Source of the DNA: Mustelus asterias
Taxonomy: Eukaryota
Direction: 5' to 3'
Assembly: GCF_964213995.1 (NCBI RefSeq)
Contig: NW_027590213.1
Span: forward strand, 310,001 to 374,000
Length of the DNA: 64,000 bases
In this document: piece after piece, positions 5,500 through 58,999 of the stretch
Position numbering within the stretch: the first letter of the stretch is position 1
How the letters are laid out: every line of letters starts with the position of its first letter
Program-made: the position numbers and the translations under genes
Notes under the pieces: generated by a model
What the model was told of the DNA's origin: nothing
What the model saw: only the letters and a program-made list of their open reading frames with translations
Database searches by the model: none

Positions 5500-6866
5500 T
5501 AGTCTAACCTCAGTGGTTGGTAAGTTGATGGAGAGGATCCTGAGAGACAGGATTTATGATCATCTAGAGAAGTTTAGTATGATCAAAAGTAGTCAGCACG
5601 GCTTTGTCAAGGGCAGGTCGTGCCTTACGAGCCTGGTTGAGTTCTTTGAAAATGTGACCAAACACATTGACGAAGGAAGAGCGGTGGATGTGGTCTATAT
5701 GGACTTCAGCAAGGCGTTCGATAAGGTCCCCCATGCAAGACTTCTTGAGAAAGTGAGAGGGCATGGGATCCAAGGGGCTGTTGCCTTGTGGATCCAGAAC
5801 TGGCTTGCCTGCAGAAGGCAGAGAGTGGCTGTGGAGAGGTCTTTCTCTGCATGGAGGTCAGTGACCAGTGGAGTGCCCCAGGGATCTGTTCTGGGACCCT
5901 TGCTGTTTGTCATTTTCATAAATGACCTGGATGAGGAAGTGGAGGGATGGGTTGGTAAGTTTGCTGACGACACCAAGGTAGGTGGTGTTGTGGATAGTTT
6001 GGAGGGATGTCAGAAGTTGCAGCGAGACATAGATAGAATGCAAGACTGGGCGGAGAAGTGGCAGATGGACTTCAACCCGGATAAGTGTGTAGTGATCCAT
6101 TTTGGCAGATCCAATGGGATGAAGCAGCAGTATAATATGAAGGGTACCATTCTTAGCAGTGTAGAGGATCAGAAGGACCTTGGGGTCCGGGTCGATAGGA
6201 CTCTTAAATCGGCCTCGCAGGTGGAGGATGCGGTCAAGAAGGCGTACGGCGTACTGGCCTTCATTAATCGAGGGATTGAGTTTAGGAGTCAGGAGATAAT
6301 GCTGCAGCTTTATAGGACCCTGGTTAGACCCCACTTGGAGTACTGCGCGCAGTTCTGGTCACCTCATTACAGGAAAGATGTTGAAGCCATTGAAAGGGTG
6401 CAGAGGAGATTTACAAGGATGTTGCCTGGATTGGGGGGCATGCCTTATGAGGATAGGTTGAGGGAGCTTGGTCTCTTCTCCCTGGAGAGACGAAGGATGA
6501 GAGGTGACCTGATAGAGGTTTACAAGATGTTGAGAGGTCTGGATAGGGTAGACTCTCAGAGGCTATTTCCAAGGGCTGAAATGGTTGCTACAAGAGGATA
6601 CAGGTTTAAGGTGCTGGGGGGTAGGTACAGAGGAGATGTCAGGGGTAAGTTTTTCACTCAGAGGGTGGTGGGTGAGTGGAATCGGCTGACGTCGGTGGTG
6701 GTGGAGGCAAACTCGTTGGGGTCTTTTACGAGACTTCTGGATGAGTACATGGGATTTAATGGGATTGAGGGCTATAGATAGGCCTAGAGGTAGGGATATG
6801 ATCAGCGCAACTTGTGGGCCGAAGGGCCTGTTTGTGCTGTGGCTTTCTATGTTCTATGTTCTATGT
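5500..6866 (+). mobile_element. 5'-truncated young CR1 LINE with open RT ORF
   Basis: ORF 5513-6781 with [21 protein letters not shown] and FADD motifs; (TTCTATG)n tail at ~6844-6866. Confidence 0.95.
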
Positions 6867-7899
6867 TAGGCGTTTAATGTCCCATGGCCGAATTGAAAGG
6901 GGAGCTGGTGAGTTAGTCATTAGGCCATGGAATTTTACAGCCCTTCATCCATTTTTGTCTGTCTTCGCCATCAAACAGCTACGTGTTCCAGCACTTGGTC
7001 CATTGCCTTGTATATAAAAGATTTGAAGAGTTCATCTCGATGCTTCTAAAATGCTGCTTTCATACCTGAAAAATTCTGAGTGTTGCCATTGACCAGAAAC
7101 ATTGCAGTTTCAACCACATTACTCTGTATCTTGAGTCACGTCTATGCCAGGCCAGGTAAGGACGGCACATTTCCTTCCGCAAAGCCGCATTAATGAACAA
7201 GATGGGGTTTTAGAGCCATCGACAATGGTCGTCATTAGATTTTATTTTATTGTTTTCAAATTTCACCAACTGCCTTGATCAGATTTGACATTTCTTCCCC
7301 GAATCAGTAACCTGGGTCTTTAAATTATTGATCCAGTGACAATACAGTGGGCCACCATCTCCCCATAGTCCAGCATCGACTTCCGTCAACCACTAATAAT
7401 TCAACATATACTGTTCGAGCAGGATAGGAGCGACCATGGAGAAGAAGTCCGATGTCGTGATAATCCTATAAACCTTCTGTTTTACCTAGTTGGGAGATTT
7501 TATCAGTCAAAGTCTTTCCCGACTTGTTCCCACCTTCCCACAATTGGCACAAAGCATTTACAATGTAGACATTGCCAACACTGAACTGTCTCTCCTTTGA
7601 AAATCACTATGGAACCAGTTCCCCCGCCCTAATTAATGGGCAGCTCCTGAAACATTGCAACTTGCCAGGTAACACTGACGCTACTCCGGGGCCACTCTAA
7701 ACTGGAGCAAATCATCTGAAACCTGAGCCATTTAAACATTTTTCTTCCCGCCAATACAACTGCCTCTCCTTGGATATTTTATATCAATGATATCCAGGGT
7801 AATCCGAAAGGCAAGCCTGGATGGGTGCTGGATGCATTCTGAGTGATAACTTCCGTTGAGGATGGAATAGACGGTTTCAGCGGGAACATAAATGTATTT

Positions 7900-10800
7900 A
7901 GAACATAGAACATAGAAAAACTACAGCACAAATAGGCCCTTCGGCCCACAAGTTGCGCCGGTCATGTCCCTACCTACCTTGGCCTATATATAGGCTTACC
8001 TACAACCCTCAATCCTATTAAGTCCCATGTACTCATCCAGAAGTCTCTTAAAAGACCCTATCGAGCTTGCCTCCACCACCATTGACGGCAGCCGATTCCA
8101 CTCACCCACCATCCTCTGAGTGAAAAACTTACCCCTGACATCTCCTCTGTACCTGCTCCCCAGCAGCTTAAACCTGTGTCCTCTCGTAGCAGCCATTTCA
8201 GCCCTGGGAAAAAGCCTCTGAGAATCCACCCGATCTATACCTCTCAACATCTTGTACACCTTTATCAGGTCACCTCTCATCCTTCGTCTCTCCAACGAGA
8301 AAATACCGAGCTCTCTCCACCTATCCTCATAAGGCATGCCAGCCAATCCAGGCAACATCCTTGTAAATCTTCTGCGCACCCTTTCAATAATTTCTACATC
8401 TGACGAGGGTCTTATAAAACTGCATCATTATCTCCCGTCTCCTAAACTCAATCCCTCAAGTGATGTAGGCCAGCACACCATACGCCTTCTTAACCACCTC
8501 CTCTACCTGTGAGGCCGATTTAAGAGCCCTATGGACCCGGACTCCAAGGTCCTTCTGAGCCTCTACACTGCTAAGAGTCTTACCCTTGATATTATACTCC
8601 TTCATTCCATTTGACCTGCCAAAGTGTACCAATACACATTTATCCGGGTTGAAGTCCATCTGCCACTTCTCCGCCCAGTCTTGCATCCTATCTATGTCAC
8701 ACTGCAGCTTCTGACGTCCCTCCAAACTATCCACAACACCACCAACCTTCGTGTCGTCGGCAAACTTACCAACCCATCCCTCCACTTCCTCATCCAGGTC
8801 ATTTATGAAAATGACAAACAGCAAGGGTCCCAGAACAGATCTCTGGGGCACTCCACTGGTGACCGACCTCCATTCAGAAAAAGACCTATCTACAACCACT
8901 CTCTGCCTTCTGCAGGCAAGCCAGTTCTGGATCCACAAGGCAACAGCCCCTTGGATCCCATGCCCTCTCACTTTCTCAAGAAGTCTTGCATGGGGGACCT
9001 TATCGAACGCCTTGCTGAAGTCCATGTAAACTACATCTACCGCTTTTCCTTCGTCAACGTGTTTAGTCACATTTTCAAAGAACTCCACCAGGCTCGTAAG
9101 GCACGATTTGCCTTTGACAAAGCCGTGCTGACTACTTCTGAGCATACTAAACTTCTCTAAATGTTCATAAATCCTGTCCCTCAGGATCTTCTCCATCAAC
9201 TTACCAAACACTGAGGTTAGACTCGCCGGTCGGTAATTTCGTGGTCTATCCCTATTCCCTTTCTTGAATATAGGAACCACATCTACAATCCTCCAATCCT
9301 CCGGAACCTCTCGCGTCTCCATCGACGACGCAAAGATCATCGACAGAGGCTCTGCAATCTCTTCCCTCGCCTCCCACGGTAACCTGGGGTACATCCCATC
9401 CGGTCCCGGCGACTTATCTAACTTGATTTTATTCAAAATTTCCAACACATCTTCTTTCTTAATGTCGACAAACTCAATCTTCTCAGTCCGCCGCAATCCT
9501 GTAGTACAACCACCCAGGTCTTTTTCCACCGTGAATACCGAGGTAAAGCATTCATTAAGCACCTCTGCTATTTCTTCCGGTTCCATACAGACTTTCTCAC
9601 CTTCAGCTTTTATAGGTTCTATTCCTTCACATCTCATCCTTTAACTCTTCACATATTTATAGAACGCCTTAAGGTTCTCCTTAATCTTACCTGCCAAGGC
9701 CTTCTCGTGACCCCTTCTGGCTCTCCTAATTTCCTTCTTCAGTCCCTTCCTACAAGCCGTATACTCATCTAGATCCCCATCATCGCCAACTCTCTGAACC
9801 TATTGTACGCTTTCCTTTTCCTTTTGACTAGGTTCAGCATAGCTTTCGTGCACCACGGTTCCCGTAACCTACCAAAATCTCCCTGTCTCATCGGAACGTT
9901 GTGATGTCGAACTCCAGACAAACATTCCTTGAAAATCTGCCACCTTACTTCGGTACTTTCCCTCGAGAGTACCTCCTTCAAATTTATGTCGCTTATCTCC
10001 TGCCTGATGGCTTCATATTTCCCCTTACTCCAAATAAACACTTTCCTAGCTTGCCTGATCCTATCTCTTTCCAATGTTAGCATAAAGGAGATAGAGTTAT
10101 GATCACTATCCCCAAGATGCTCCCCCACTGAGAGATCCGACACCTGTCCAGGCTCATTAGCCAGTACCAGATCGAGTACAGCCTCTCCTCTTGTCGGCTT
10201 ATCCACATGCTGTGTCAGGAAACCCTCCTGTACACAACTCACAAACTCCTCCCCATCCAAGCCCCTTACCCTAGGGATATTCCAATCAATGTTTGGGAAA
10301 TTAAACTCTCCCAACACGACAACCGTTATTCCTACATCTCTCCAGGATCTGTTTCCCTATCTGCTCCTCAGCAGCCCTGTCACTATTGGGCGGCCTATAG
10401 AAAACATCCAGCAAAGTTATCGACCCCTTCCCGCTCCGAACTTCCACCCACAGAGACTCCGTAGACAACCCCTCCACGGCGTCCACCTTCTCTACAGCTG
10501 TGACAATATCCCTGATCAGCAGTGCCACTCCCCCCGCTCTTCTGCCTCCCTCTCTGCCCTTTCTGAAACATCTGAAACCCGGCACCTGAAGTGTCCAGTC
10601 CTGTCCCTGTCCCCAAGTCTCCGTAATGGCCACCACATCACACTTCCAAGCATCGATCCACACTCTAAGCTCATCCACTTTATTTACTACACTCCTGGCA
10701 TTAAAATAGACATATCTCAAACCATTGGTCTGAGCTCTCCCGTTCTCTATCACCCGTCTATTCTCCCTCTTCCGCTGTCTACAATCCCTCTCTATTTGTG

Positions 10801-15454: not shown

Positions 15455-15493
15455 GATTTTTGTACAGGGCTGGGTGTGATCTATATCACTGTG
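15455..15493 (-). other. 23-RSS of the IgH-like V
   Basis: CACAGTG + 23 nt + ACAAAAATC. Confidence 0.95.
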
Positions 15494-15969
15494 CCGTTGT
15501 GCACAGTGATATGTAGAGCTGCCTCCCATTGTTAAAGTCCTAATAGAGAGCACGAATACACTGTTGGAAAGGTATTTGGTTGCAGTGATTCGTTCACCAA
15601 ACTCCGGATTGTAATTCTTGCTATTTTCATTGTAGTACCAAAGGAGCCAGCCCGGTCCCTTCCCGAGACTGTGTCGGTACCAAAGCATGGTGTATCTCCC
15701 AAGATCAAATCCACTGGTTTTACAGGTTAGGGTCAGGGTTTGCCCGACTATCCCTATCTCTGCCTCTGGCTGGATCAACACCACATCCGACTGGACGCCT
15801 GCTAACCGAAAGAAACAATAATTATGGTGAGGTGAATCCAGTTTGTGTCACGCCACAGGGAATGATTAATGTTAAACAGAGACTATGGGAGCTTTCTGAG
15901 AATATCCAACTACTCACAGGATAAGAAGCCAATAAACAGACCGAGAGATATTGCTAGCGCCATGCTCAT
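15494..15969 (-). CDS. IgH-like V gene segment (TAILV-like), open reading frame. Leader exon 15918-15969, V exon 15494-15798.
   Basis: Spliced: MSMALAISLGLFIGFLS|CVQSDVVLIQPEAEIGIVGQTLTLTCKTSGFDLGRYTMLWYRHSLGKGPGWLLWYYNENSKNYNPEFGERITATKYLSNSVFVLSIRTLTMGGSSTYHCAQR. GTGAGT donor, CAG acceptor, phase 1. FR1 resembles shark VH (DVVLxQPEAE..LTCKTSGF). Confidence 0.9.
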
Positions 15970-17430: not shown

Positions 17431-17643
17431 GTGATATTACAAAAATTTCATTCCACTTAGCAAACTTAAACCACATGAGATTTATGAGGAAGTGACTGTC
17501 CGGGTGTGATATTATCCGTACGTTAGATGGATGGCCTTATTCTGTGTGGTAGAGTAACACTATGGTTCCATGAATTGTTGTCAGCAATGAATCTATTGGA
17601 GTTTGATGAAGGGGACAAACTGTGTGCAGTTCCTCTAGTTTGG

Positions 17644-17682
17644 GTTTTTTTTACAAATCTGGGGCTGACCCGCCTCACTGTG
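17644..17682 (-). other. 23-RSS of the V pseudogene
   Basis: CACAGTG + 23 nt + AAAAAAAAC. Confidence 0.85.
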
Positions 17683-18438
17683 TTAACTGTGTACTCTAAT
17701 AAGCAGCTGTTTCCTCCATCGTCAGAAACCTGACATCCAAAGCAAATATATTGTGTGCAAGCTCTTTGGAAACAGTGAATCGTCCTCGAGTCTCCCCACA
17801 GTATCAATGGAAGTCTTCATCATAGTAGGAAACTAGCCAGTCTGACATCTTTCAGGTACCATGACAGTACCAGTACAGCCAATAGCCACTGAAGTCGAAG
17901 CCGCTGGTATTGCAGGTCAGGGACAGGGACTACACTGGGAACCACTTCTCTGCCTCTGGCTGCGTCAGAACTACTTCCGACTGGACACCTGTTAAAGTCA
18001 AAGAGACATCCATTATTGTGATGGGCGGATCGGTGGCACAGTGGTTTTTATTCCAGGCCTGAGTACTATCTGTGTGGAGTTTAGACGTTCTCCCCGTGCC
18101 TGCGTGGGTTTCCTCTGAATGCTCCAATTTCCTTCCACAGTCCAAAGATATGCACGCTAGGTGGATTTATCATGCTAACGTGTTCCTAAATATCGGTAGA
18201 TGTCTCGATTAGGTGATTAGCAGGGGTTACGGGGACATGGCAGAGTGGGCCTGGGTGCAAACTCAATGGTGAAATAGCCTCCTTCTCACTGTAGGGATTC
18301 TATGATGATTCCTTCCCCTGTAACACACCATTGAAAGGTGAGGTTCTGCAAACACACACAGCAGGAATTTGGGGAAATGTCAAGCAGCTCACTGCAGAAG
18401 GAACCCTCCAATAGTCCGAGTAACATTGTTAACCTCAT
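17683..18438 (-). pseudogene. IgH-like V pseudogene, paralog of 15494-15969. Leader 18393-18438, V exon 17683-17988.
   Basis: MRLTMLLGLLEGSFC|SVQSEVVLTQPEAEKWFPV*SLSLTCNTSGFDFSGYWLYWYCHGT*KMSDWLVSYYDEDFH*YCGETRGRFTVSKELAHNIFALDVRFLTMEETAAY*S. Four in-frame stops and the second canonical Cys is lost. Confidence 0.88.
18020..18305 (+). mobile_element. HE1-like V-SINE in the leader intron of the V pseudogene
   Basis: GGTGGCACAGTGG head and V-SINE core TGTGTGGAGTTT..GTTCTCCCCGTG..TGCGTGGGTTTCCTC. Confidence 0.75.
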
Positions 18439-19655: not shown

Positions 19656-20124
19656 TCCATCACCTGTAAATCAGTCTCTGGTAACCATACATCCACTTTG
19701 CGTGCTAGTCCAGCAGTTGATGTGGCTGCTAATCTATCTAACTCTCTGGTGTCCATATATCTTTGTGTGTTAGTCAATCTGCCGATGAAACTATCCACTA
19801 AACTGTCCAGTGACCATATATTTGTCTTCTTTAATTCATCAGTTCGCGTGTCTATAACTCGATCTACCTAACTGTCCAGTGACCATATATCTGCTTTGTA
19901 TGTGAATGCATCAATTCCTGTGTTTACCACTCTATTTATCTAGCTGTCTAGTGGCCATATATCTGTTTTGTGTGTTACTGAATCAGCTGATGTGTCTAAG
20001 AATCTAATTCACATCTGTCTGCCTGTCCATCCCTGTGTTGATGCTGCAATTCTACAACACCGACATTGGACAATGGGGCTACAAATCATGCCCAGCGTCC
20101 CCATTGCCTGGGAGAGGAACCTAC

Positions 20125-20163
20125 AGTTTACGTAGAGGCTGCTGCCTGGAATGTGCGAGTGTG
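20125..20163 (-). other. Degenerate 23-RSS
   Basis: CACACTC + 23 nt + ACGTAAACT directly after the V exon. Confidence 0.7.
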
Positions 20164-21238
20164 TGTGTTTAAGATGCAGAAGTATTTCCTGGAGTCCTCA
20201 GCTGTCACCGGTGCAACTGTCAGACTGATGATTCTGTAAGTTTTGCTCAGGGAGGAGGAAAAGCGACGCCTGGAAAATGTGGCGCTGTCACTGAAACCAT
20301 CGGTGCAGCGGACGACAATATACTCGGGACTTCCCCCCATGGCTGGGTGGAGAGGTTCCCGGTACCAGACCAAGCAAGCTCTCTCCACCTCTGTGTATGA
20401 GCAGGTGATTGTCGTGGTGGCTCCCTGTTGGACCCTCACCTCTGCCTCCGGCTGGTGGATGACTGCGGATGCAGCCAGGCTACCTGAAGGATAGAGAAAA
20501 TTAGAATTAAGTGGAGGTTCCAGGCACTCTATCGATTTGAAACTGGGGAGCTGCGGGGGAGGGGGAGGATGGGGTGTGCCCAATGGAGGTTGGCCCCAGT
20601 TCCCACTGCCTTTTCTCACTACTGAAGCTTTTAAATAACTATTTGTAAAATTCCAATCATTAAATAAACTCAGTCACCAGTAATGTTGCTGTGTACTTAT
20701 CTCGAAAGATCAACATTAAATATAAGAATATAAAATAATTTATTGAAAGGAAATCAATGAGAATAACTAAATTAAGTTGATTTATCAGTGTCACAAGTGG
20801 GCTTACATTAACACTGCAATGAAGTTACTGTCGCCACGCTCCAGCGCCTGTTCTATTACACTGAGGGAGAGAATAGCACGGCCAATGCACCTAATCAGCA
20901 CATGTTTCGGACTGCAGGAGGAAAACATAGCACCCGGAGGAAACTCACGCAGACATGGGGGGAACGTGCAGACTCTGCACAGTGACCCAAGCCGGTAATC
21001 GAATCCGGGTCCCTGGCGCTGTGAGGCAGCAGTGCTAAACATTGTGCCAAAATGCCGCCCCTAATAATTAATTAAATCCAACCACTGCGAATATTGCTCT
21101 ACTTTTTCTCTAAAAGCAACATTAAATGTGGAAGAATAAAAGGCTTTCTTGAGAGGTAATCAATGAGAATGTGAAGTGTAACTCACCTGATATGATTGCT
21201 GCTAGAATGAAAGCTTTTAACCCTCGTGGGCGATCCAT
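20164..21238 (-). CDS. TCR alpha/delta-type V gene segment, open, with two non-canonical Cys. Leader 21187-21238, V exon 20164-20483.
   Basis: MDRPRGLKAFILAAIIS|GSLAASAVIHQPEAEVRVQQGATTTITCSYTEVERACLVWYREPLHPAMGGSPEYIVVRCTDGFSDSATFSRRRFSSSLSKTYRIISLTVAPVTAEDSRKYFCILN; phase-1 GTGAGT/CAG splice sites. Confidence 0.85.
20775..21062 (-). mobile_element. Full-length V-SINE (tRNA-derived head) in the leader intron
   Basis: Minus strand starts GGGCGGCATTTTGGCACAATGTTTAGCACTGCTGCCTCACAGCGCCAGGGACCCGGATTCGATT, followed by the V-core. Confidence 0.8.
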
Positions 21239-25126: not shown

Positions 25127-26039
25127 TGTTGGTTGGTTTTTCGAGGTGGTCAGATACCGTCAGTAAATCTCAGACAAAACAAGACCGACGAAGCCAGTGT
25201 CTCAGTTTAAAGACGTAACCTTTATTTTGACCAGCGGCCACCAAGAGAAATAATTAAAGGGTCAGGGCAGCTCTGATATAGAGCATCTCGCCCTCTCCAA
25301 TGAAATCTGACGTATGCAATTCAAATCAGGCCAATTATAGTTTTCCTTATTAATTACTCCCGCCTTTCATGAGCTTTAAATCAATCATCTTCAATATACT
25401 TAAACCAGCAATAATTTATGTTAGATACCTTTGCCAATCACATCTTACCTTCTGGCAAAATGGCAGTTCCTTCGTCCTTAGAATTGCAAACTCCTACCTT
25501 GGCTAACCCAGATTTCTGTATCCCATAGTAACCAGACACCAGCCCCAAAGTTCAAAGGGCACGTTCCAATGAGTTCCTCTACAGGTCACTGCCAAAGCAG
25601 ATTAACACTTGACTCCACGTCTGGGCATGCATCCATTTTATCTGGACAGTGAATATACCCTATTCATAAAATTTGTTTAAGTGTTCTGAATGTTCTTTCC
25701 ATTCGAAGCTCTACTGATTAAACTTGCATATTCTCAAGGTTTTAATATTTTTTTAGAATATGACTTTGCCCTAATGCCCTATAACATAATGCTTTGCAGC
25801 ATACTGCCTTTGGCAATAGTGAACAATGATTCTTAAAAATATATTAATACATTCAAATCTTTAAATCATAATCACTTGTTTAAATCTCTTACTGCATTTC
25901 ATATGTGTGCAAACTGCTTTCGTGTTACTTTATAAATATGTTTTAAAGTCATTTAACTTAATGCTGGTAGTTCTGTCAGTGTCCTCATTTCTAAATGTCT
26001 AAAAATCTTTACTAACCTATTAGAATTTTTCCCCGTACA
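25127..26039 (-). mobile_element. Solo LTR with 5-bp target-site duplication
   Basis: TG...CA termini flanked by CACAC at 25122-25126 and 26040-26044; minus-strand AATAAA near 25221; diverged relative at ~47335-48221. Confidence 0.7.
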
Positions 26040-26517
26040 CACACGTTTACCTCTTTAATCTCATTAATCGTGTCCCAGTTAGCTCATGGCTCAGATATTA
26101 ATCCAGAGATTATTACCTTTTTGTTTATGATTTTGAGTTTAGAACCTGGCTATTCATCTTCCCGTAGCAGAATGTGCATCCTTGCTCTGCCTGTGTCATT
26201 CGTACATACGTCAAAAATGACAACTGGATTTTCCCCCTCCCATTCCGAATTTCTCTGCAGTCCAGAGGAGGTGAACCGAAACCTGGCACCAGGGGGCAAC
26301 ACAATCTACAGGACTATCGCTCCTGGTCACAGAGAACATTGTCTGTGCCCCGAACTATACGATCGCCGATTACGACTAGATTCCTCCTTCCTACCCCACT
26401 TGAATGGCTCTCTGGCCCACGGTACTGTGGCCAGTTCGCTCATCTGTCCTACAGTCCTCGCCCTCGTCAACAGCAGGAGCAAGAAAGTTGAACCTGTTGG
26501 ACAAGCAGTAGGACTAA

Positions 26518-26739
26518 GTTTTCAGCACATCTCTCTCCATGTTCTGTATCACTGTGTCTGTAATCCTCACCATGTTCAGGTTTTTGTGCAGCTCTCTCCT
26601 TGTTCTGTATCACTGTGTCTGTAATCCTCACCATGTTCAGGTTTTTGTACAGCTCTCTCCGTGTTCTGCATCACTGTGTCTGTAATCCTCACCATGTTCA
26701 GGTTTTTGTACAGCTCTCTCCGTGTTCTGTATCACTGTG
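26518..26739 (-). repeat. 61-bp tandem repeat of the 23-RSS
   Basis: Heptamers CACAGTG at 26733-39, 26672-78, 26611-17 and 26550-56. Perfect nonamers ACAAAAACC at 26701-09, 26640-48 and 26579-87, each 23 nt from its heptamer. The fourth nonamer is degenerate (GCTGAAAAC). Confidence 0.95.
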
Positions 26740-27045
26740 CTATGTGCCGACTCAGTCCACAGTAATAGACAGCCGAGTCGCTTAGCTGCAGTTTGGAGAT
26801 CTTTAACCGGCTGATTTTCTGGACAGAATCGATAGAAGCAGAAATTCTCTCCCCGGCAGCGTTTTCTTTATTGCCCCCTCCTGAAGTGTGTTTCTGCAGC
26901 AAGTATTTCAGAGTCTGCCCTGGGGGCTGGCTGTACCAGTGTACTGTGTACTGACAGATTCCTGAATATTCACAGCTTAATGTAACCGTGTCACCAGCAG
27001 CAGAGGTTTGTAGAGGCGGATTCTTGGATACCAGGGAAGAGGAAC
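26740..27045 (-). CDS. TRDV: NAR-TCR supporting V-delta segment (leaderless, CDR1 Cys), open
   Basis: Acceptor TTTCTAATCCTGCAG, then (G)SSSLVSKNPPLQTSAAGDTVTLSCEYSGICQYTVHWYSQPPGQTLKYLLQKHTSGGGNKENAAGERISASIDSVQKISRLKISKLQLSDSAVYYCGLSRHI. Absent from the ORF track because it has no start codon. Confidence 0.9.
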
Positions 27046-27244
27046 CTGCAGGATTAGAAAAAAAAGCGTTTGTTTAGGTTTTGCCATTTTTTAGTCGGAG
27101 ATTGTGTCAGTCGCAGGAGTAGCTCAGTTTTATGCGGAGTTATTATTATTTTAATTCTAATGGAACGATATTGACTTACGCTATAAACCAGTGTACAGTG
27201 AGGTGACATTTTATTTTGCACAAGTTCTAATGATCTGTAACGAT

Positions 27245-27700
27245 GTTATTAAACTGGAGGGAGTGCAGAAGAGATTTACAAGGATGTTGCCAGGACTCAA
27301 GGGACTGAGTTATAGGGAGAGTTTGGACTTTTTCCTTTGGTGCGTAGGAGATAGAGGGGTGATCTTATAGAAGTGTATAAGATCATGACAGGCACGGATA
27401 GGGCGAATGAACTCAGTCTTATTTCCAGGGTTTGGGAGTCGAGAGCAAGAGGGAATAGGGAAAGAAGTAACCTGCAGAGCAACTTTTTTTTACACAGAGG
27501 TGGTACGTATGTGGAATGAGCTGCCGGAGGGAGTGGTTGAGGCAGGGACATTGTCAACATTTAAAAGGCATTTGGACAGATACATGGATAGGAAAGGTTT
27601 AGAGAGATATGGGCCAAATGCAGGCGAATGGCTGAGCTTCGACGGACATTTTGATCGGCATGGATCAGTTTGGATCTGCCGTAAATTCTGTGAATCTATG
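27245..27700 (+). mobile_element. CR1 3' fragment
   Basis: LEGVQKRFTRMLPGL..GDLIEVYK-like coding remnant; ORF 27407-27718. Confidence 0.8.
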
Positions 27701-30992: not shown

Positions 30993-31051
30993 CGGCTGTG
31001 ACAGTCACCACCGTCCCGGATCCATCCACATAATCATATTTCCGTTTAGTA
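30993..31051 (-). CDS. NAR-TCR J segment
   Basis: TKRKYDYVDGSGTVVTVTA followed by a phase-1 donor GTAAGT (30987-30992); xGxG-TxxTV J motif. Confidence 0.92.
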
Positions 31052-31090
31052 CACAGTGGCACCTCTCTCAGTCTCCCCGGTACAAGAACC
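31052..31090 (-). other. 23-RSS 5' of J
   Basis: GGTTCTTGT + 23 nt + CACTGTG on the minus strand. Confidence 0.92.
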
Positions 31091-31401: not shown

Positions 31402-31472
31402 GGTATTTGCTCAGCTTCCTTCCACTGTGACTCTCCCAAAGTTACACAGTGTTACAATTCAGCATCAAAATA
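31402..31472 (-). other. NAR-TCR D segment (31430-31444, TAACTTTGGGAGAGT) flanked by two 12-RSS
   Basis: Plus strand: GGTATTTGC-12-CACTGTG-[15 nt]-CACAGTG-12-ATCAAAATA. Confidence 0.88.
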
Positions 31473-31832: not shown

Positions 31833-31870
31833 AGTTTTTGTATCGCTGGATGCCGAGGCCCATCACGGTG
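31833..31870 (-). other. RSS of NAR-TCR V (22-nt spacer)
   Basis: CACCGTG + 22 nt + ACAAAAACT. Confidence 0.9.
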
Positions 31871-32337
31871 TGCCAGTACCAGTAATGAGCTTTACAGTAA
31901 TAGGTGGCGGTGTCTTCAACTCTCACATCCCGAATTTCCAGCGAAAATGTCTTTTCTGCTTTGTTCACAGACACAACAAATCTCCCTCCGCTGGAGATCC
32001 GCTCCCACTCCGTCCCGGTCTGGGTTTGTCTGAAGAAATGTCCATTTTCTAAGTGATAACCATGTAAAACACAGGTGATGGTGAGAGACTGACACTTCTT
32101 CCTGGTCACCGCTGCCGGGCTCTGTGTCACTGACTGACTGAAACATCCTGGAAATTAAACACAGAGAGTTTATTGGACCATCAGAGCCGAACCGCACAAC
32201 GGGGCTAAAACCCAGACAGTGTCTGCAATTGGGATGGACTGGGGCAGCTTTATATTCAATCCACACAATGTAGTTTAGTGCGATTAGTACTCACGGTGTA
32301 AACAGACACACAGACTGAAAACAAGAAGGATTCCCAT
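31871..32337 (-). CDS. NAR-TCR V (IgNAR-like V), open. Leader 32295-32337, V exon 31871-32147.
   Basis: MGILLVFSLCVCLH|RCFSQSVTQSPAAVTRKKCQSLTITCVLHGYHLENGHFFRQTQTGTEWERISSGGRFVVSVNKAEKTFSLEIRDVRVEDTATYYCKAHYWYW. VNAR-type CDR2 deletion (ERISSGGRFVVSVN), extra FR1 Cys, and its own D and J downstream. Confidence 0.93.
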
Positions 32338-34810: not shown

Positions 34811-37600
34811 CCTCTTTTTAGGCCAAATCAAATAAACAAACTCAGATTAAGTCAGGACAAAGTAAAAGGGGCAGCTCCCCAAAAGGAGGGGGAACAGTCC
34901 GAACAGAAATCAAAGTACAAAGGAAACTTTAAAAGATCAAATTAAAATGTGATTATTAGGGTCGATAACGCACCCCAACCCCTGCCGTGCCCAACGGGCG
35001 TGGAAGGCATCAACCGCGCCCATGGACACCGCCTGCTCCCTCTCCACGGAGAGCTGGCCGCGAACGCCACCACGGTAGAGGGGAAGACAGTCAGGATGGA
35101 CGACCCCCGCGATCGCCCGCTGCCTGGACCGGTAAATGGCGCGTTTCACCAGGCTTAGGAGCAGGTTCACAAGGAGGTCACCATCCCGACCCTCCCCTCT
35201 CCACACCGGGTGTCCGTGGATCAGGAGCGTGGGACTGAAGTGCAAACAGAACATCAATAAAAGGTTCTTCAGGAAAACATAAAGTTAGTGCAGCCTAAGA
35301 CACTCAACATAGACATGGTCCACGGACTCCACAAGGCCGCAGAAAGGGCAGTCTTCGGAGCCCGTGAACCAGTGAATCCTACGGTTGTGCGGAACTGCTG
35401 CATGCATCACCCTCCACCCCAGGTCCCCGACGTAATTGGGGGAGATCCCTCCGTAGAGGGACCTCCACCGCCCGGCGGCAACAAGGCCCGCCAAGGTGTA
35501 TCCGGGTGACAGGCGAGGAGGCGGTAGTGGAAGGTGTGCAGCAGCAGCCCGCACAGGAGACGCCTCCGCGCGGTAGAAAAAGGCATTGAGGGCATTTCCG
35601 CGAGGCAGCTCAGGCTGTGGGGCACCTCACCCAGGGGAGGGGGCTGAGGCTTTGGTCCAATGTGGAATTCCGCCCGAACAGGGGAACGCTCGGGCGGGAT
35701 CCCACTGCACGCCTGCGCCGTCTCGAGTTTGCGTGCAGTTTCGGGGCCGAGCACGACCGTCCTAAGGTCTAGGATGGCTTTGGCCGCGTGCCGAACGGAC
35801 ATCCCCGCGCGCTCAGCCAGCACGCGGGGACTCATCCAGCCCGCTCCTCCGCCATCGAGCACGTCCCCGATTCTGGTCACCCCGGCGTCCACAGCCCCCC
35901 TCTCCGCCAGCCACCTGAAGTCATACGGCTGGAGGAGCGGATTCCTGAGCAGCGGCTCTCGCACGAGAGCCGCTACTCCTGACGGGGGAGAGCTGCGTCG
36001 CGAGGCGACCGTGTTCCAGACAGTGAGGAGGTCCTGGTAAAAGATGGGCAACTCCTGCAGGGCGGTCGAAGCACGCCCCAGTTCGATATGCAGGAGCTGC
36101 ACGTCATAATTGAGACCGTGCCACTGGCGGAAGAAATACGTCGCCATGGCACACCACTGTGGAGGGGGCTCAACGTAAAGGTACCTCTGCAGGGCCTGGA
36201 GGCGGAAGGTCGCTATCTGAGTGCGGAGGCACACCAGACCTTGTCCGCCCTCCTCAAGCGGGAGATGCAGAACCGCAGCAGGGACCCAGTGCAGTTGATT
36301 GTCCCAGAAGAACCGCAGGAGGGTTCTCTGGATATCAGTGACAAAGCCAGGGGGAGGGGTCAAAGGGACCAGCCGGTACCACAGCATGGAGGCGACCAGC
36401 TGGTTTATGACGCGAACTTGTGCCCCGTAGGACAGCACTCGGAGCAGTCCTGTCCAGCGACTCAGGCGGGCGGAGACTTTGGCCTCCAGCTCCCGCCAGT
36501 TCGCCGGCCAGGATTCCTCGGCTGGGCAGAGATGGGCCCCCAAGTAGAGGAGGTTGGTCCTGCTCCAGGTGAAAGGCCTGAGCTCCTCCGGAAGGGGGTC
36601 CGTCTCCCAAGGACCGACAAGAGTCCGGAGCACTTGGCCCAGTTGATCCTGGCGGAGGACGCGGCGGAGTACACCGCCTGGCATTCTCGCATCCTCCGCA
36701 GGTCAGCCGGGTCCGTGAACATGAGGAGCACGTCGTCAGCGTAAGCTGACAGGACCACCCCTACGTCCGGTCCACGCAGGGCCAAACCTGACAACCTCCT
36801 CCGCAAGAGGCGCAGGAATGGCTCCACGCATACGGAATACAGTTGGCCGGACAAGGGGCAGCCCTGCCGTACTCCTCTCCCGAAGCGAAGGGGTGCCGTC
36901 AGGGACCCGTTAACCTTAATCAGACACTCTGCGGCAGAGTACAGTAATCGGATCCGGGCGACAAAATGCGTCCCGAACCCGAATGCCCGCAGAGTCCCGA
37001 GTAAATACTCGTGCTCCACCCTGTCGAACGCCTTCTCCTGATCTAATTACAAGAAGGCGCCCGACAGACCAGCCCTCTGGGTGTGATGGATTAGGTCCCG
37101 GACCAGGTGGAGATTGTCATGTATGCAACGGCCCGGGACCGTGTAGGACTGGTCAGGGTGGATCAAGTGGTCCAGCACGGATCCAAGGCGTGAAGCCATA
37201 GCCCTGGCAAATATTTTACAATCCGTGCTGAGGAGGGAGACCGGGCGCCAGTTATTGAGCAGGTGGAGATCCCCCTTCTTGGGCAGCAGGGCAATGACGG
37301 CCCTGCGCCACGAAAGGGGCATCTCCCCGGTAGCGACGCTCTCCCCCAGGACGCCCGCGTAGTCGCTCCCCAGGACGTCCCAGAACGCCCTGAAGAACTC
37401 TGTCAGCCCGTCCAGCCCAGGGGCCTTGCCCCGGCTGAGCCCATTTAGGGCGCCGGTCAGCTCGGCCATGGTGGTAGGGGCCTCGAGCCTGCCGACGCCC
37501 TCCGGGCTGACCTGCGGCACGTCCTCCCACAGAGGAGTGCGGGCATCCTCGCTGGACGGATCCGGAGAGAAGAGCGAGGTGTAATACTCCCGGGCAATGG
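34811..37600 (-). mobile_element. Tx1-clade non-LTR retrotransposon, defective copy C (RT and 3' end)
   Basis: Near-identical to 51332-54138 but with a stop near 37047 and small deletions; ORFs 36462-37019 (YADD) and 35407-36684. Confidence 0.92.
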
Positions 37601-38135
37601 CAATTCGGGGGGGGGCAATTCGGGGGGGGCCATTCGGGGGGGGGCCATTCGGGGGGGGGGCCATTCGGGGGGGGGGGGGGCCATTCGGGGGGGGGGCCAT
37701 TCGGGGGGGGGGCCATTCGGGGGGGCGCAATTCGGGGGGGGGCAATTCGGGGGGGGGCAATGCCCGGGGGGGCAATGCCCGGGGGGGGGGCAATGCCCGG
37801 GGGGGGGCAATTCGGGGGGGGCAATTCGGGGGGGGGGGGCAATTCGGGGGGGGGGGGCAATTCGGGGGGGGGGCAATTCCCGGGGGGGGGGCAATGCCCG
37901 GGGGGGGGGGCAATGCCCGGGGGGGCAATGCCCGGGGGGGGGCAATGCCCGGGGGGGGGCAATGCCCGGGGGGGGGCAATGCCCGGGGGGGGGGCAATGC
38001 CGGGGGGGGGGCAATGCCGGGGGGGGGGCAATGCCCGGGGGGGGGGCAATACGGGGGGGGCAATGCCGGGGGGGGGCAATGCCGGGGGGGGGGGCAATGC
38101 CGGGGGGGGGGGGGCAATGCCGGGGGGGGGGGGAC
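37597..38135. repeat. G-rich low-complexity repeat (GGCAATGCCCG(n)) next to an assembly gap
   Basis: Variable G-runs; the unit resembles adjacent Tx1 sequence GGGCAATGGCCCGG. Confidence 0.8.
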
Positions 38136-40899: not shown

Positions 40900-41380
40900 T
40901 GCTGTATCACTGTGTAATCCAACAATTAATCCAGTTCCCCTGGATTCCTGCTCTGTAACATATCACTGTGTAATCCAACAATTAATCCAGTTCCCCTGGA
41001 TTACTGCTCTGTAACATATCACTGTGTAATCTAACAATTAAAGCAGTTTTCCTACATTAATGCTCTGTATCACTTCACTGTGTGATCTAACAATTAATCC
41101 AGTTCTCCTGATTTATGTTTCCCTGTATCAATGTGTAATGGAACCCACTCCTGATACCGTGATCACACAAACACGGTGAGGGAGCTCCCTCTGGTGGTGA
41201 TCTGAGGTAAATGGCCTCTGCTTGGGAGATCAGTGAATTCTCAGACTACTGGAGGATCTTTCTTGTTGCAGGATTACGCTGCTGTATTTTTCTTAGGAAT
41301 AAGAAAAATACGCTCTGTAACATATCACTGTGTAATCCAACAATTACTCCAGTTCTCCTGGATTACTGCTCTGTAACATA
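40900..41380. repeat. 56-bp minisatellite
   Basis: CACTGTG-containing unit starts at 40908, 40964, 41020 and 41076, with an isolated copy at 41326. Confidence 0.8.
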
Positions 41381-41459
41381 ATACGTAATACGCTGTAATT
41401 CAGTAATACGCTGTATTCAGTGTAATCCGGCAACAAGATCCTCCAGCAATTATAAATTG

Positions 41460-42270
41460 CCCCTCTGGAACTTTTGTATCTCTCCCCTCTCACCTTAAAC
41501 CTGTGCCCTCTAGTTTTAGACTCCCCTACCTTTGGGAAAAGATATTGACTATCTAGCTGATCTGTGCCCCTCATTATTTTATAGACCTCTATAACATCAC
41601 TCCTCAGCCTCCTACGCTCCAGAGAAAAAAGTCCCAGTCTATCCAGCCTCTCCTTATAACTCAATCCATCAAGTCCCGGTCGCATCCTAGTAAATCTTTT
41701 CTGCACTCTTTCTAATGTAATAATATCCTTTCTATAATAGGGTGACCAGAACTGTACACAGTATTCCAAGCGTGGCCTCACCAATGTCTTGTCCAACTTC
41801 AACAAGACGTCCCAACTCCTGTATTCTATGTTCTGACCAATGAAACCAAGCATGCCGATGCCTTTTTCACCACTCTGTCCACCTGTGACTCCACTTTCAA
41901 GGAGCTATGAACCTGTACCCCTAGATCTCTTTGTTCTGTAACTCTCCCCAGCGCCCTACCATTAACTGTGTAAGTCCTGCCCTGGTTCGATCTACCAAAA
42001 TGCATCACCTCGCATTTGTCTAAATTAAACTCCATCTGCCATTCGTCAGCGCACTGGTCCAATTGATCAAGATCCCGTTGCAATCAGAGATAACTTTCTT
42101 CACTGTCCACTATGCCACCAATCTTGGTGTCATCTGCAAACCATGCCACCTATATTCTCATCCAAATCATTAATATACATGACAAATAACAGTGGACCCA
42201 GCACTGATCCCTGAGGCATATCGCTGGCCACAGACCTCCAGTTTTAAAGAAAGCCCTCTACAACCACACT
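41460..42270 (-). mobile_element. CR1 RT/3' fragment
   Basis: ORFs 41826-42083 and 41344-41853 (VRPRLEYCVQFWSP). Confidence 0.9.
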
Positions 42271-43155: not shown

Positions 43156-44250
43156 ATGGAGAAACCATGGAAATGTGCGGACTGTGGGAAGAGATACAGA
43201 TACCCAACTGAGCTGGAAGCTCATCGGCGCAGCCACACTGGGGAGAGACCATTCACGTGCTCTCAGTGTGGGAAGGGATTCACTCAGTCATTCAACCTGC
43301 AGAGACACCAGCGAGTTCACACTGGGGAGAGGCCGTTCACCTGCTCTCAGTGTGGGGAGGGATTCACTTCTTCATCCCACCTGCGGAGGCACCAGCGAGT
43401 TCACACTGGAGAGGGGCCGTTCACCTGCTCTCAGTGTGGGGAGGGATTCACTTCTTCATCCTACCTGCGGAGGCACCAGCGAGTTCACACTGGGGAGAGG
43501 CCGTTCACCTGCTCTCAGTGTGGGAAGGGATTCACTCGGTCATCCAGCCTGCGGACACACGAGCGAGTTCATACTGGGGAGAGGCCGTTCACGTGTTCTC
43601 AGTGTGGGGAGGGATTCACTCGGTCATTCAGCCTGCGGGCACACGAGCGAGTTCACACTGGGGAGAGGCCATGCACCTGCTCTCAGTGTGGGAAGGGATT
43701 CTGTGACTCATCCCGCCTGCTGAGACACCAGCAAGTTCACACTGGGGAGAGGCCGTTCACCTGCTCTCAATGTGAGAAGAGATTCACTCGATTATCCAGC
43801 CTGCTGAGACACCAGCGAGTTCACACTGGAGAGAAGCCGTTCACCTGCTCTGTTTGTGGGAAGGGATTCAGTCAATCATCTAACCTGCAGAGACACACGC
43901 AAGTTCACACTGGGGAGAAACCGTTCATCTGCTTTCATTGTGGGAAAGGATTCACTCTGTCTTCGAACCTGCGGACACACCAGCGAGTTCACACTGGAGA
44001 GAGGCCGTTCACTTGCTCTGTGTGTGGGAAGGGATTCACTCAGTTATCCACCCTTCAGTCACACCAACGTGTTCACACTGGGGAGAGACCATTCACCTGC
44101 TCTGTATGTGAGAAGGGATTCACTCAGTTATCTGCCCTGCAGTCACACCAGCGAGTTCACACTGGGGAGAAACCATTCACCTGCTCTGAGTGTGGGAAGG
44201 GATTCAGTGTTTTATCCACCCTGCACAGACACCAGCAAGTTCACGAGTGA
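43156..44250 (+). CDS. Tandem C2H2 zinc-finger protein, 13 fingers
   Basis: [10 protein letters not shown].. followed by repeated HTGE(R/K)PFTC linkers; CACCATGG start context; acceptor TTTTACAG at ~42804. Confidence 0.85.
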
Positions 44251-57865: not shown

Positions 57866-58650
57866 GGCAGGCAAGCAGGCAGTCCAGACGGCAGGCAGCC
57901 CAGACGGCAGGCAGGCAGGCAGTCCAGACGGCAGGCAGGCAGGTAGGTAAGCAGGCCAGACGGCAGGCAGGCAGGTAAGCAGGCCAGACGGCAGGCAGGC
58001 AGGTAAGCAGGCCAGACGGCAGGCAGGCAGGTAAGCAGGCCAGACGGCAGGCAGGCAGGTAAGCAGGCCAGACGGCAGGCAGGCAGGTAAGCAGGCCAGA
58101 CGGCAGGCAGGCAGGTAAGCAGGCCAGACGGCAGGCAGGCAGGTAAGCAGGCCAGACGGCAGGCAGGCAGGTAAGCAGGCCAGACGGCAGGCAGGCAGGT
58201 AAGCAGGCCAGACGGCAGACAGGCAGGTAAGCAGGCCAGACGGCAGGCAGGCAGGTAAGCAGGCCAGACGGCAGGCAGGCAGGTAAGCAGGCCAGACGGC
58301 AGGCAGGCAGGTAAGCAGGCCAGACGGCAGGCAGGCAGGTAAGCAGGCCAGACGGCAGGTAGGCAGGTAAGCAGGCCAGACGGCAGGCAGGCAGGTAAGC
58401 AGGCCAGACGGCAGGCAGGCAGGTAAGCAGGCCAGACGGCAGGCAGGCAGGTAAACAGGCCAGACGGCAGGTAGGCAGGTAAGCAGGCCAGACGGCAGGC
58501 AGGCAGGTAAGCAGGCCAGACGGCAGGCAGGCAGGTAAGCAGGCCAGACGGCAGGCAGGCAGGTAAACAGGCCAGACGGCAGGCAGGCAGGTAAGCAGGC
58601 CAGACGGCAGGCAGGCAGGTAAGCAGGCCAGACGGCAGGCAGGCAGGCAA
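57866..58650. repeat. 28-bp tandem repeat in the Tx1 5' UTR (about 25 copies)
   Basis: Unit GCAGGCCAGACGGCAGGCAGGCAGGTAA (e.g. 57951, 57979). Confidence 0.95.
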
Positions 58651-58999
58651 CAGGCAGGCCGGGCAAGGCAGGCAGCAGCTCACCTCCCTCCTTCCTCCCC
58701 GCAGGGAGCGAAAAACAAACAAACCCAACAAAACAAAAACAAAAACCGGGCGTCTCCGTGAGCAAAAACGAGAGAAAAAAAAAATAAAGGTACTCACAAA
58801 AAAAGAAAAGAAAACAAACCCACAGTTTCCGCCCGGCTCCGACCCGGGGCCCCCCGCTACTCGGGCGAACACGAATCCACCTCACCCCGGAAACAAAACT
58901 GGGTGTTGTCCGAGAGGAGGCACGTCTCAGGCCGTCTGAAGCTCAATCTTCATTAAGAGGGAAGCAGCCGCTTGACCAGCTCCACGTTCAGACAATCAG

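What the first reader, a model, noticed from the sequence alone, without database searches (positions are those of the whole stretch)
26518..26739. Tandemly amplified RAG signal: four stacked 23-RSSs behind the NAR-TCR supporting V-delta
Seen: a 61-bp unit (39-bp 23-RSS plus 22-nt linker TGAACATGGTGAGGATTACAGA) is repeated, giving four CACAGTG heptamers and three perfect ACAAAAACC nonamers at exact 23-nt spacing. Spacer sequences differ slightly between copies, which argues against a pure assembly stutter. Also seen: the V frame reads ..CAC ATA GCA CAG TGA through the first heptamer, so any join made at a distal RSS carries a stop codon. Established: V segments normally have one RSS. Inference: the array could raise local RAG loading, act as decoys that lower productive NAR-TCR output, or allow repeated attempts, because a distal join leaves the more proximal RSSs available for a later join to a downstream 12-RSS. 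I know of no description of this arrangement.
Basis: partly seen in the sequence, partly recalled or inferred. Interest (0 to 1): 0.85.

Follow-up and report, generated by a model that had tools for sequence, protein, structure and literature searches.

The report
Tandem recombination signals behind shark V-delta
A shark T-cell receptor V segment that normally would carry one RAG cutting signal carries a 61-base repeat holding three perfect signals and a fourth weak one, which looks like a natural in-cis competition between cutting sites and has not been described in the papers I could search.

Summary
On the minus strand an intact, leaderless V-set exon (27045-26740) lies 3.9 kb downstream of a NAR-TCR V-D-J unit. 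It is followed by a 61-bp tandem repeat (26739-26518; 3.5 copies, 95% matches, no indels). The repeat has four CACAGTG heptamers and three perfect ACAAAAACC nonamers at 23-nt spacing. The fourth nonamer matches the consensus at only 5 of 9 positions. Chance expects 0.00 perfect 23-RSSs in the window; there are 3. The V frame hits TGA inside the first heptamer, so only a cut at the proximal signal can be productive.

Contigs from independent public runs (three of the four laid; two organism labels) contain RSS-linker-RSS pieces. One contig carries a longer, paralogous array. This rules out an assembler stutter for the arrangement, but no contig spans this locus, so its exact copy number is unverified. 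The scan's first readers noted 61-bp RSS arrays (2 to 9 copies) behind other supporting V-deltas on other pieces of this genome; I could not read those.

Best reading: a VNTR-like amplification of the V's own RSS, inherited across NAR-TCR cassettes. Its distal copies probably act as cleavable in-cis competitors that give dead joins and leave the proximal RSS available. Selection for this is unproven. I found no prior description, but the key NAR-TCR paper was not held.

The parts
32295..32337 (-). Leader exon of the NAR-TCR V (ATG at 32337, followed by donor gtgagt)
   Evidence: Read directly from the sequence.
31871..32147 (-). NAR-TCR V exon (...CQSLTITC...FFRQ...YYCKAHYWYW)
   Evidence: Sequence. 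Pfam V-set E 5.1e-08. Has the a-b loop Cys and lacks the canonical Trp, as described in PMC1845163.
31833..31870 (-). Single RSS of the NAR-TCR V (CACCGTG, 22-nt spacer, ACAAAAACT)
   Evidence: RSS scan and sequence.
31402..31472 (-). NAR D segment (31444-31430) with a 12-spacer signal on each side
   Evidence: Sequence. The 3' RSS, CACAGTG-12-GCAAATACC, was found. The 5' nonamer is weak (5 of 9, read by eye).
30993..31090 (-). NAR J (31051-30993) with its 23-RSS (31090-31052); it ends ...GTC ACA GCC G|gtaagt, a phase-1 donor
26740..27045 (-). Leaderless supporting V-delta exon with a phase-1 acceptor (cag|GT TCC...) and a CDR1 Cys (EYSGICQYTVHWY)
   Evidence: Pfam V-set E 4.2e-15. No leader-like exon within 455 nt upstream. 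72% identical to P0001, a protein from a public JGI/ENA assembly (source organism not named) that carries the same CDR1 Cys.
26701..26739 (-). RSS 1, proximal: perfect heptamer and nonamer, 23-nt spacer. It is the only copy that abuts the V coding end.
   Evidence: X1 record 7 (26710-26913, 1 other letter) runs from the V end through the heptamer and the spacer. X5 record 29 (26695-26981, 10 other letters) covers the whole RSS.
26679..26700 (-). Linker 1 (22 nt), identical in all three copies
26640..26678 (-). RSS 2: perfect heptamer and nonamer; spacer differs from RSS 1 at 1 position
26618..26639 (-). Linker 2
26579..26617 (-). RSS 3: perfect heptamer and nonamer; spacer differs from RSS 1 at 2 positions
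26557..26578 (-). Linker 3
26518..26556 (-). RSS 4, distal and degenerate: perfect heptamer, nonamer GCTGAAAAC (5 of 9). The repeat ends here.

Best explanation
The array is a 61-bp, VNTR-like tandem amplification of the supporting V-delta's own 23-RSS together with 22 nt of its 3' flank. It probably arose by slippage or unequal exchange in an ancestral NAR-TCR cassette. It then spread as the cassettes duplicated, and exchange between units keeps them alike.

Mechanistically it puts three consensus 23-RSSs and one weak one in the same orientation behind one coding end. Published work on competing signals suggests RAG should be able to cut at any of the consensus copies. Only the cut at heptamer 1 can give an open frame. 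A cut at heptamer 2, 3 or 4 leaves one to three RSS units, each with an in-frame TGA, inside the coding joint, so that join is dead. It does, however, keep the proximal 23-RSS(s) on the chromosome, where they could still pair with a remaining downstream 12-RSS.

The distal copies are therefore in-cis competitors. They lower, delay or re-partner productive joining of this V. They do not add productive attempts.

Shown here: the anatomy, the in-frame stop, independent read support for the tandem arrangement, and its presence at paralogous loci and under a second organism label. Inferred: the origin, actual cleavage of distal copies, and the net effect on NAR-TCR output. I take the array to be neutral or mildly costly rather than selected.
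For: - Anatomy and statistics.
- In-frame TGA in heptamer 1.
- Unit differences lie only in the spacer, and the linker is as invariant as the heptamer and nonamer. That is the pattern expected from recent homogenisation, not from constraint on signal letters alone.
- Independent contigs: X1 record 3 (423 nt) lies on 26533-26725 and then 'goes back 117', so it is a longer array with a different flank. X1 record 4 (1832 nt) lies on 26579-26739 at about 90%. X3 record 12 lies on 26558-26655. X5 (organism B) records 26-28 lie inside the array across a linker, and record 29 joins the V end to RSS 1.
- Among the array rows listed table 3, 3 of 6 lie in nonamers (26706, 26645, 26640), so nonamers are not specially protected across the unit family.
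- First-stage notes report 2, 3, 5, 6 and 9 copies behind other supporting V-deltas. These are unchecked leads.
- The other V segments with a recognisable RSS in the window each have a single signal: 15493, 17682 and the NAR V at 31870.
- Competing RSSs on one plasmid are used according to heptamer, spacer and nonamer quality, with no effect of inner versus outer position (PMC2212273, passages read).
Against: - No data show where RAG actually cuts here. No RNA run was found, and no lymphocyte joints were seen (contigs only).
- All four heptamers and three nonamers are perfect, whereas the other V signals in the window are imperfect. Arrays are reported behind every supporting V noted so far, and one exists under a second organism label. 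Such persistence of a feature that should waste rearrangements could mean selection.
- The plasmid competition data come from mammalian 12-RSSs separated by whole gene segments, not from signals 61 bp apart on chromatin. Steric exclusion or loop-extrusion scanning could strongly favour one copy.
- The copy number at this locus is unverified.
Confidence: 0.55

Rival explanations
1. Selected regulatory device. The array is maintained because it tunes joining of the leaderless supporting V. It could act as a multi-signal landing pad that raises capture by the TRD recombination centre. It could throttle NAR-TCR output. Or it could force stepwise nested joins that use up upstream D segments, so that the supporting domain ends with a short or D-less CDR3.
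For: - The three perfect consensus 23-RSSs are the only perfect ones in 64 kb.
- Arrays are reported behind all supporting V-deltas noted in this genome (unchecked) and are absent behind the other Vs of the window.
- Tandem pieces exist under a second organism label about 3.5-5% diverged at this locus (X5 records 28-30).
- A retained proximal 23-RSS can, by the 12/23 rule, still pair with a downstream 12-RSS (established knowledge).
Against: - There is no differential conservation of signal letters. The linker is equally invariant, and nonamer variants are common among laid units.
- The reported copy numbers vary from 2 to 9, as in a drifting VNTR.
- A distal cut never yields a productive join, so any benefit must be indirect.
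- There are no usage data.
Confidence: 0.25
2. Inert minisatellite. The array is real, but RAG uses essentially only the proximal signal, for example because of coding-flank effects, nucleosome position or steric effects at 61-bp spacing. The distal copies would then have no effect on recombination.
For: - The array has the form of an ordinary minisatellite (the window holds several others).
- The 61-bp spacing is far tighter than in any tested competition substrate (PMC2212273 used whole V segments).
Against: Units 2 and 3 have perfect heptamers and nonamers, and their spacers differ from unit 1 by only 1-2 letters. By every sequence criterion recalled for RSS strength they are as good as unit 1. 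Coding-end sequence had only a small effect in PMC2212273.
Confidence: 0.15
3. Assembly artefact. The true locus has one RSS (or fewer copies), and the assembler stuttered.
For: - None of the pieces listed spans the array at this locus.
- Run X4 has no depth at 26155-26715.
- The best holders share under half of the sampled words.
Against: - The units differ at three spacer positions.
- The window's unit-2 and unit-3 letters at 26669 and 26600 make up part of the depth in X1 and X3 (table 3).
- Linker-to-heptamer junctions appear in contigs of X1, X3 and X5, built by a different assembler from other samples.
- A 423-nt contig holds at least 4.5 units (table 5 and record 3).
Confidence: 0.05

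Closest known systems
Canonical single 23-RSS of TCR and Ig V segments
   Same: Consensus heptamer CACAGTG, 23-nt spacer and nonamer ACAAAAACC, with the heptamer abutting the V coding end (unit 1).
   Different: Here the whole signal plus 22 nt is repeated head to tail. Units 2-4 abut non-coding linker, not a gene segment.
Minisatellite / VNTR
   Same: 61-bp period, head-to-tail units of high identity, a more diverged edge unit, and different lengths at paralogous loci.
   Different: The unit is a complete, consensus RAG target in a locus where RAG is active, so copy number is not expected to be functionally silent.
Plasmid competition substrates with two RSSs competing for one partner (PMC2212273, passages read)
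   Same: Several like-oriented signals compete in cis for one partner. Use follows signal quality, not position.
   Different: Those are artificial and extrachromosomal, and each signal has its own V coding end. Here the arrangement is natural and chromosomal, the spacing is 61 bp, and only one copy has a coding end.
Secondary rearrangement through a retained or embedded signal (VH replacement via a cryptic heptamer; receptor editing). Recalled, not read here.
   Same: A signal that survives a first join allows a second join on the same allele.
   Different: Those use a cryptic heptamer inside the V, or fresh upstream V segments, and they rescue a failed receptor. Here the first join is dead by construction, and the retained signals are full consensus RSSs downstream of the same V.
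Inactivating recombination signals such as the kappa-deleting element / RS (recalled)
   Same: Use of the signal yields a non-functional allele.
   Different: Those delete the C region or enhancers and act late. Here the dead join is a by-product of signal choice at the V end.
NAR-TCR (shark) and TCR-mu (marsupial, monotreme) two-V-domain chains
   Same: The array sits in a cassette of the NAR-TCR type: NAR V-D-J spliced to a leaderless supporting V (PMC1845163 and PMC12227049, passages read).
   Different: None of the passages I could read mentions more than one RSS behind the supporting V.

Membership tests
23-bp-spacer recombination signal sequence (RSS) | Heptamer CACAGTG, with the first three letters CAC critical | tested here: met
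   4 of 4 units have CACAGTG.
23-bp-spacer recombination signal sequence (RSS) | A-rich nonamer ACAAAAACC with three consecutive A's | tested here: met
   3 of 4 units are perfect. Unit 4 is GCTGAAAAC, 5 of 9, and keeps the A run. The criteria are as stated in PMC2212273.
23-bp-spacer recombination signal sequence (RSS) | Spacer of 23 +/- 1 nt | tested here: met
   Exactly 23 nt in all four units.
23-bp-spacer recombination signal sequence (RSS) | Heptamer directly abuts a coding gene segment | tested here: inconclusive
   Met for unit 1 only. Units 2-4 abut the 22-nt linker.
23-bp-spacer recombination signal sequence (RSS) | Cleaved by RAG1/2 in lymphocytes | not testable with these tools
   No RNA or lymphocyte-DNA raw reads were available. 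Only contigs could be laid.
NAR-TCR supporting V-delta | V-set domain without a leader exon, entered through a splice acceptor | tested here: met
   Pfam V-set E 4.2e-15. The acceptor cag|GT is at 27046/27045. In the 455 nt upstream there are only 3 ATGs, and none gives a signal-peptide-like exon with a good phase-1 donor.
NAR-TCR supporting V-delta | Conserved extra cysteine in CDR1 | tested here: met
   EYSGICQYTVHWY. The feature is as described in PMC1845163. P0001 has the same motif.
NAR-TCR supporting V-delta | Upstream NAR-type V (leader, a-b loop Cys, no Trp in WYRx) with its own D and J, the J ending in a splice donor in phase with the supporting V | tested here: met
   One search shows leader 32337-32295, KKCQSL, FFRQ, a D with flanking signals, and a J ending G|gtaagt. 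The phase-1 donor plus GT gives GGT, and the frame stays open.
NAR-TCR supporting V-delta | Expressed as a three-domain delta chain after two rearrangements | not testable with these tools
   No RNA run holds the stretch.
Minisatellite / VNTR | Head-to-tail units of 10-100 bp | tested here: met
   Period 61, 3.5 copies, 95% matches.
Minisatellite / VNTR | Copy number varies between alleles or individuals | tested here: inconclusive
   Longer and shorter arrays with other flanks exist in X1 (records 3 and 4), but they look like paralogues. No allele of this locus was spanned. First-stage notes give 2-9 copies at other cassettes (unchecked).

The most novel reading that the evidence does not exclude
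The 61-bp arrays are a selected, lineage-specific part of the NAR-TCR cassette. They would be a natural multi-RSS landing pad that raises capture of the leaderless supporting V by the TRD recombination centre and imposes nested, stepwise joining. Distal cuts come first, each removing a downstream D or its 12-RSS, until the proximal signal makes the only productive join. This would set both how often NAR-TCR chains are made and how short the supporting domain's CDR3 is. It would be the first known case of RSS copy number used as a regulatory variable in V(D)J recombination.
Probability: 0.18. Interest if true: 0.88.

Novelty: new variant of a known kind. Interest (0 to 1): 0.64.

Why it matters
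V segments are taken to carry one RSS. How RAG chooses among neighbouring signals on chromatin (by signal strength, by position, or by the direction of loop-extrusion scanning) has mostly been studied with artificial substrates or cryptic sites.

A family of natural cassettes carries reportedly 2 to 9 near-identical consensus signals 61 bp apart behind a single coding end. Every distal cut leaves a sequence-readable scar of +61 bp steps with an in-frame stop. That makes it a ready-made in vivo competition assay.

If the arrays prove to be selected, RSS copy number becomes a new way of tuning segment usage. It would also bear on how sharks coordinate the two rearrangements that a NAR-TCR chain needs. 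If they prove neutral, they show how much wasted recombination a TCR-delta locus tolerates.

Tried and rejected
- **Related loci.** The search for homologous proteins with the supporting V returned 2 proteins with E <= 0.001 among 4 candidates. One was a 72%-identical supporting-V-like ORF, P0001, that stops at its contig edge before any RSS.
- **Metagenome scans.** An exact scan for nonamer-N22-heptamer-N23-nonamer found 0 stretches. A protein-guided scan found 276 pattern matches, none confirmed by tblastn. Those collections probably hold almost no shark DNA, so the blanks say nothing about other sharks.
- **Copy number.** No listed contig spans the array. Depth cannot be used as copy number, by the tool's own warning. 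In X1 the summed word depth reaches 1095 in an array bin, against 109-143 in five of the six bins that lie wholly inside the V exon (738 in the sixth). That only fits 'many similar units'.
- **Common origin with the 56-bp array at 40905-41110** (each unit holds CACAGTGATA): rejected. The best local alignment is 14 nt with score 28, a score reached by 10 of 1446 random window pieces and 3 of 500 shuffles. That array has no nonamer at 12 or 23 nt (read by eye).
- **Linker derived from a V 3' end (ATTAC...).** This was only an eye comparison at about chance level after discounting the anchor, so I dropped it.
- **Rescue of distal joins by splicing** (heptamer CA|GTGATA as donor, linker ...TTACAG|A as acceptor): rejected as unlikely. 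The donor is weak and the acceptor has no pyrimidine tract (read by eye). It was not tested.
- **Leader exon upstream of the supporting V:** none. The only good donor (AGC|GTAAGT at 27179) is in phase 0 after a 10-residue non-hydrophobic ORF, and read in that phase the V exon runs into a stop.
- **A D/J partner in the window.** The 12/13-spacer signal-like site at 675-703 is followed by neither a D nor a J-like frame. The partner 12-RSSs lie outside the window. First-stage note s1-892081 places a D and the first J across the window's low edge; I did not test this.
- **First tblastn with the supporting V** used a wrong reading frame and is void. The repeat found only itself plus two distant Vs (30.7% and 26.1% identity). 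The 122-nt two-unit blastn query matched only the array itself, apart from hits of 15 nt or less.
- **Literature.** Searches gave no paper describing tandem RSSs behind a V. The two V(D)J papers that contain 'multiple RSSs' mean something else (passages read). Criscitiello et al. 2006 (PMC1458790) and PMC7909615 were not held. Supplements were closed and not requested. A description could sit in any of those.
- **Findings look-up by sequence:** blank.

Full report
**What is there.** On the minus strand the window holds a complete NAR-TCR cassette.
- A leader exon lies at 32337-32295.
- A NAR-type V exon lies at 32147-31871, with the a-b loop cysteine (KKCQSL) and FFRQ in place of WYRQ. It carries a single RSS (CACCGTG, 22-nt spacer, ACAAAAACT).
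- A 15-nt D (31444-31430) has a 12-spacer signal on each side.
- A J (31051-30993) sits behind a 23-spacer signal and ends ...GCC G|gtaagt.
- About 3.9 kb further on, a V-set exon starts directly at a splice acceptor (cag|GT TCC, 27045) and runs open to ...YYCGLSRHI at 26740.

The J's phase-1 donor and this acceptor keep the frame. I found no leader-like exon in the 455 nt upstream. CDR1 carries the extra cysteine (EYSGICQYTVHWY). These are the features that PMC1845163 (passages read) gives for NAR-TcRV and its associated TcR-delta V. Pfam scores both exons as V-set (E 5.1e-08 and 4.2e-15).

**The array.** Immediately after the V coding end come four units with a 61-bp period, starting at 26739, 26678, 26617 and 26556.
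- Units 1-3 each consist of CACAGTG, a 23-nt spacer, ACAAAAACC and the 22-nt linker TGAACATGGTGAGGATTACAGA.
- Unit 4 keeps the heptamer and spacer, but its nonamer is GCTGAAAAC (5 of 9), and similarity to the unit ends there.
- TRF reports period 61, 3.5 copies, 95% matches and no indels. The repeat finder reports three 101-nt copies spaced 61 and 61.
- The three full units differ at 3 of 61 columns, all in the spacer. Heptamers, nonamers and linkers are identical.
- The exact pattern heptamer-N23-nonamer occurs three times in 64 kb, all here, against a mean of 0.00 in 100 shuffles.
- The V frame reads ...CAC ATA GCA CAG TGA, so the first heptamer holds an in-frame stop.

**Is it an artefact?** All 23 listed runs are kept as Logan contigs, and none is on record as RNA. 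I laid four runs on 25900-27400 at 90% likeness, which also admits paralogues. They were X1, X3 and X4 (three samples of organism A) and X5 (organism B).

No listed piece spans the array, and X4 has no depth at 26155-26715. The copy number at this locus therefore remains unverified. The tandem arrangement itself, however, is independently supported:
- X1 record 3 (423 nt) lies on 26533-26725 and then goes back 117 with 5 letters between. It is an array of at least about 4.5 units with a different flank.
- X1 record 4 (1832 nt) lies on 26579-26739 at about 90% and then runs into other sequence.
- X3 record 12 covers 26558-26655.
- In X5, records 26-28 lie inside the array across a linker (for example 26648-26736). 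Record 29 (287 nt, 10 other letters) joins the V exon to RSS 1 and the start of the linker.
- The window's own unit-specific letters at 26669 and 26600 make up part of the depth in X1 and X3 (table 3).

A stutter of one assembler cannot explain this. The best DNA holder may be the sample the assembly came from, so I count samples S2 (X3) and S4 (X5) as the independent ones.

**It is a family trait.** Look-ups in the scan's own notes returned twelve distinct first-reader notes, on other pieces of the same genome, that describe 61-bp or tandem 23-RSS arrays behind other supporting V-deltas. The copy numbers they give are 2, 3, 5, 5+6 and 9. These are unchecked AI notes, and I could not read that DNA. 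They do agree with the paralogous arrays seen.

Within this window, the other V segments with a recognisable signal have one each: the two IgH-like Vs at 15493 and 17682, and the NAR V. A second supporting V or a second copy of the unit is absent from the window.

**How it most likely works.**
- *Origin (inferred).* Slippage or unequal exchange duplicated the RSS plus 22 nt of flank in an ancestral cassette. Cassette duplication spread it, and exchange between units keeps them alike. The linker is exactly as invariant as the signal letters. Among the laid unit family, 3 of the 6 listed variable array positions lie in nonamers: ACAGAAACC twice and ACAAAAACT once (table 3; 17 further rows were not shown). 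This is the pattern of homogenisation, not of constraint on signal letters.
- *Consequence (inferred from established RAG biology).* On plasmid competition substrates, two signals competing for one partner are used according to heptamer, spacer and nonamer quality. Inner versus outer position has no effect and the coding end has only a small effect (PMC2212273, passages read). Units 1-3 are equal by those criteria, apart from 1-2 spacer letters, so cuts at units 2 and 3 should be frequent.
- *What a distal cut does.* It puts 61, 122 or 183 nt carrying the TGA into the coding joint. Removing the stop by trimming would need more than 50 nt, so the join is dead. The join keeps the proximal 23-RSS(s), which by the 12/23 rule could still pair with a remaining downstream D or J 12-RSS.
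- *What this implies.* It is not a way to get more productive attempts, because only the heptamer-1 cut can be productive and it ends the series. The distal copies are competitors that dilute, delay or re-partner the productive join.

I give this package 0.55. The rivals are a selected tuning device (0.25), an inert minisatellite in which only the proximal signal is used (0.15) and an assembly artefact (0.05).

**Comparison with what is known.** Each unit passes the sequence tests for a 23-RSS. Only unit 1 passes 'abuts a coding segment', and cleavage is untested. As a repeat it is an ordinary minisatellite. Functionally its nearest relatives are artificial competition substrates and secondary rearrangement through retained or embedded signals (VH replacement, receptor editing; recalled, not read).

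I found no description of tandem RSSs behind a V:
- Searches for NAR-TCR terms returned 3, 25, 2 and 24 papers.
- Searches for phrases such as 'tandem RSS(s)', 'duplicated RSS', 'multiple RSSs' and 'RSS array' returned 10 papers. Only two concern V(D)J recombination, and both use the phrase in another sense.
- A shark/TCR delta/RSS search returned 44 papers, 25 of them listed.
- A search on competing RSSs returned 12 papers.
- Passages read in PMC12227049, PMC10322711, PMC5931798 and PMC1845163 do not mention it.

The founding NAR-TCR paper (PMC1458790) and PMC7909615 were not held. Supplements were closed, and most subscription papers are outside the library. 'Not described' is therefore provisional.

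**Verdict.** This is a real, statistically unmistakable feature, correctly read by the first stage. It is probably a family-wide, copy-number-variable amplification of a consensus RSS. I class it as a new variant of a known kind. It is interesting mainly as a natural in vivo test of how RAG chooses among adjacent signals, and for the possibility, unproven, that signal copy number tunes NAR-TCR assembly. Interest 0.64.

Noticed in passing
window 40905-41110 and about 41325-41440 (minus strand): A 56-bp tandem array (3.7 copies). Every unit contains CACAGTGATA but has no nonamer at 12 or 23 nt. It lies next to a LINE-like 3' end at 41440-41800. Similarity to the RSS array is only 14 nt and near chance (10 of 1446 random pieces score as high).
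   Followed up: partly
window 20161-20424 (minus strand) and 19801-19995: A V-set ORF (Pfam E 6.3e-09) with no recognisable RSS behind its YFC end. A 72-bp tandem repeat (2.8 copies) lies about 150 nt downstream. Possibly a V pseudogene or a decayed signal.
   Followed up: no
window 15491-15790 and about 17640-18145 (minus strand): Two IgH-like V segments, each with a single 23/24-spacer signal (nonamers ACAAAAATC and AAAAAAACC), among the TCR Vs. First-stage note s1-893876 also lists them.
   Followed up: partly
window 26679-26700 (each linker): The 22-nt linker contains ATG|GTGAGG, which resembles a 5' splice site, and ends ...TTACAG|A just before the next heptamer. It is as invariant as the heptamer and nonamer. 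No function was tested.
   Followed up: no
window 27226-27400: A very high-copy repeat just upstream of the supporting V (summed word depth above 50,000 in the 27226-27327 bins for X1, X3 and X5 and about 6,000-8,000 for X4, with many loose ends). It belongs to the same LINE-like family as 41440-41800.
   Followed up: no
window 43234-44244 and 63382-63890: 84-bp-period arrays that read as C2H2 zinc-finger repeats (…TGEKPF-type units). Zinc-finger genes or pseudogenes therefore lie upstream of the V cluster.
   Followed up: no
window 50599-51046 and 57895-58675; also 37599-38131: Two copies of the same 28-bp GC-rich minisatellite bracket a 60-67% GC block at 50-59 kb. A G-rich 17/18-bp array of about 32 copies sits beside an assembly gap.
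   Followed up: no
window 675-703 (plus-strand coordinates): A signal-like site with a perfect heptamer, a 12/13-nt spacer and a 7-of-9 nonamer, oriented to face the V signals. No D- or J-like coding sequence lies behind it, so it is probably cryptic.
   Followed up: partly
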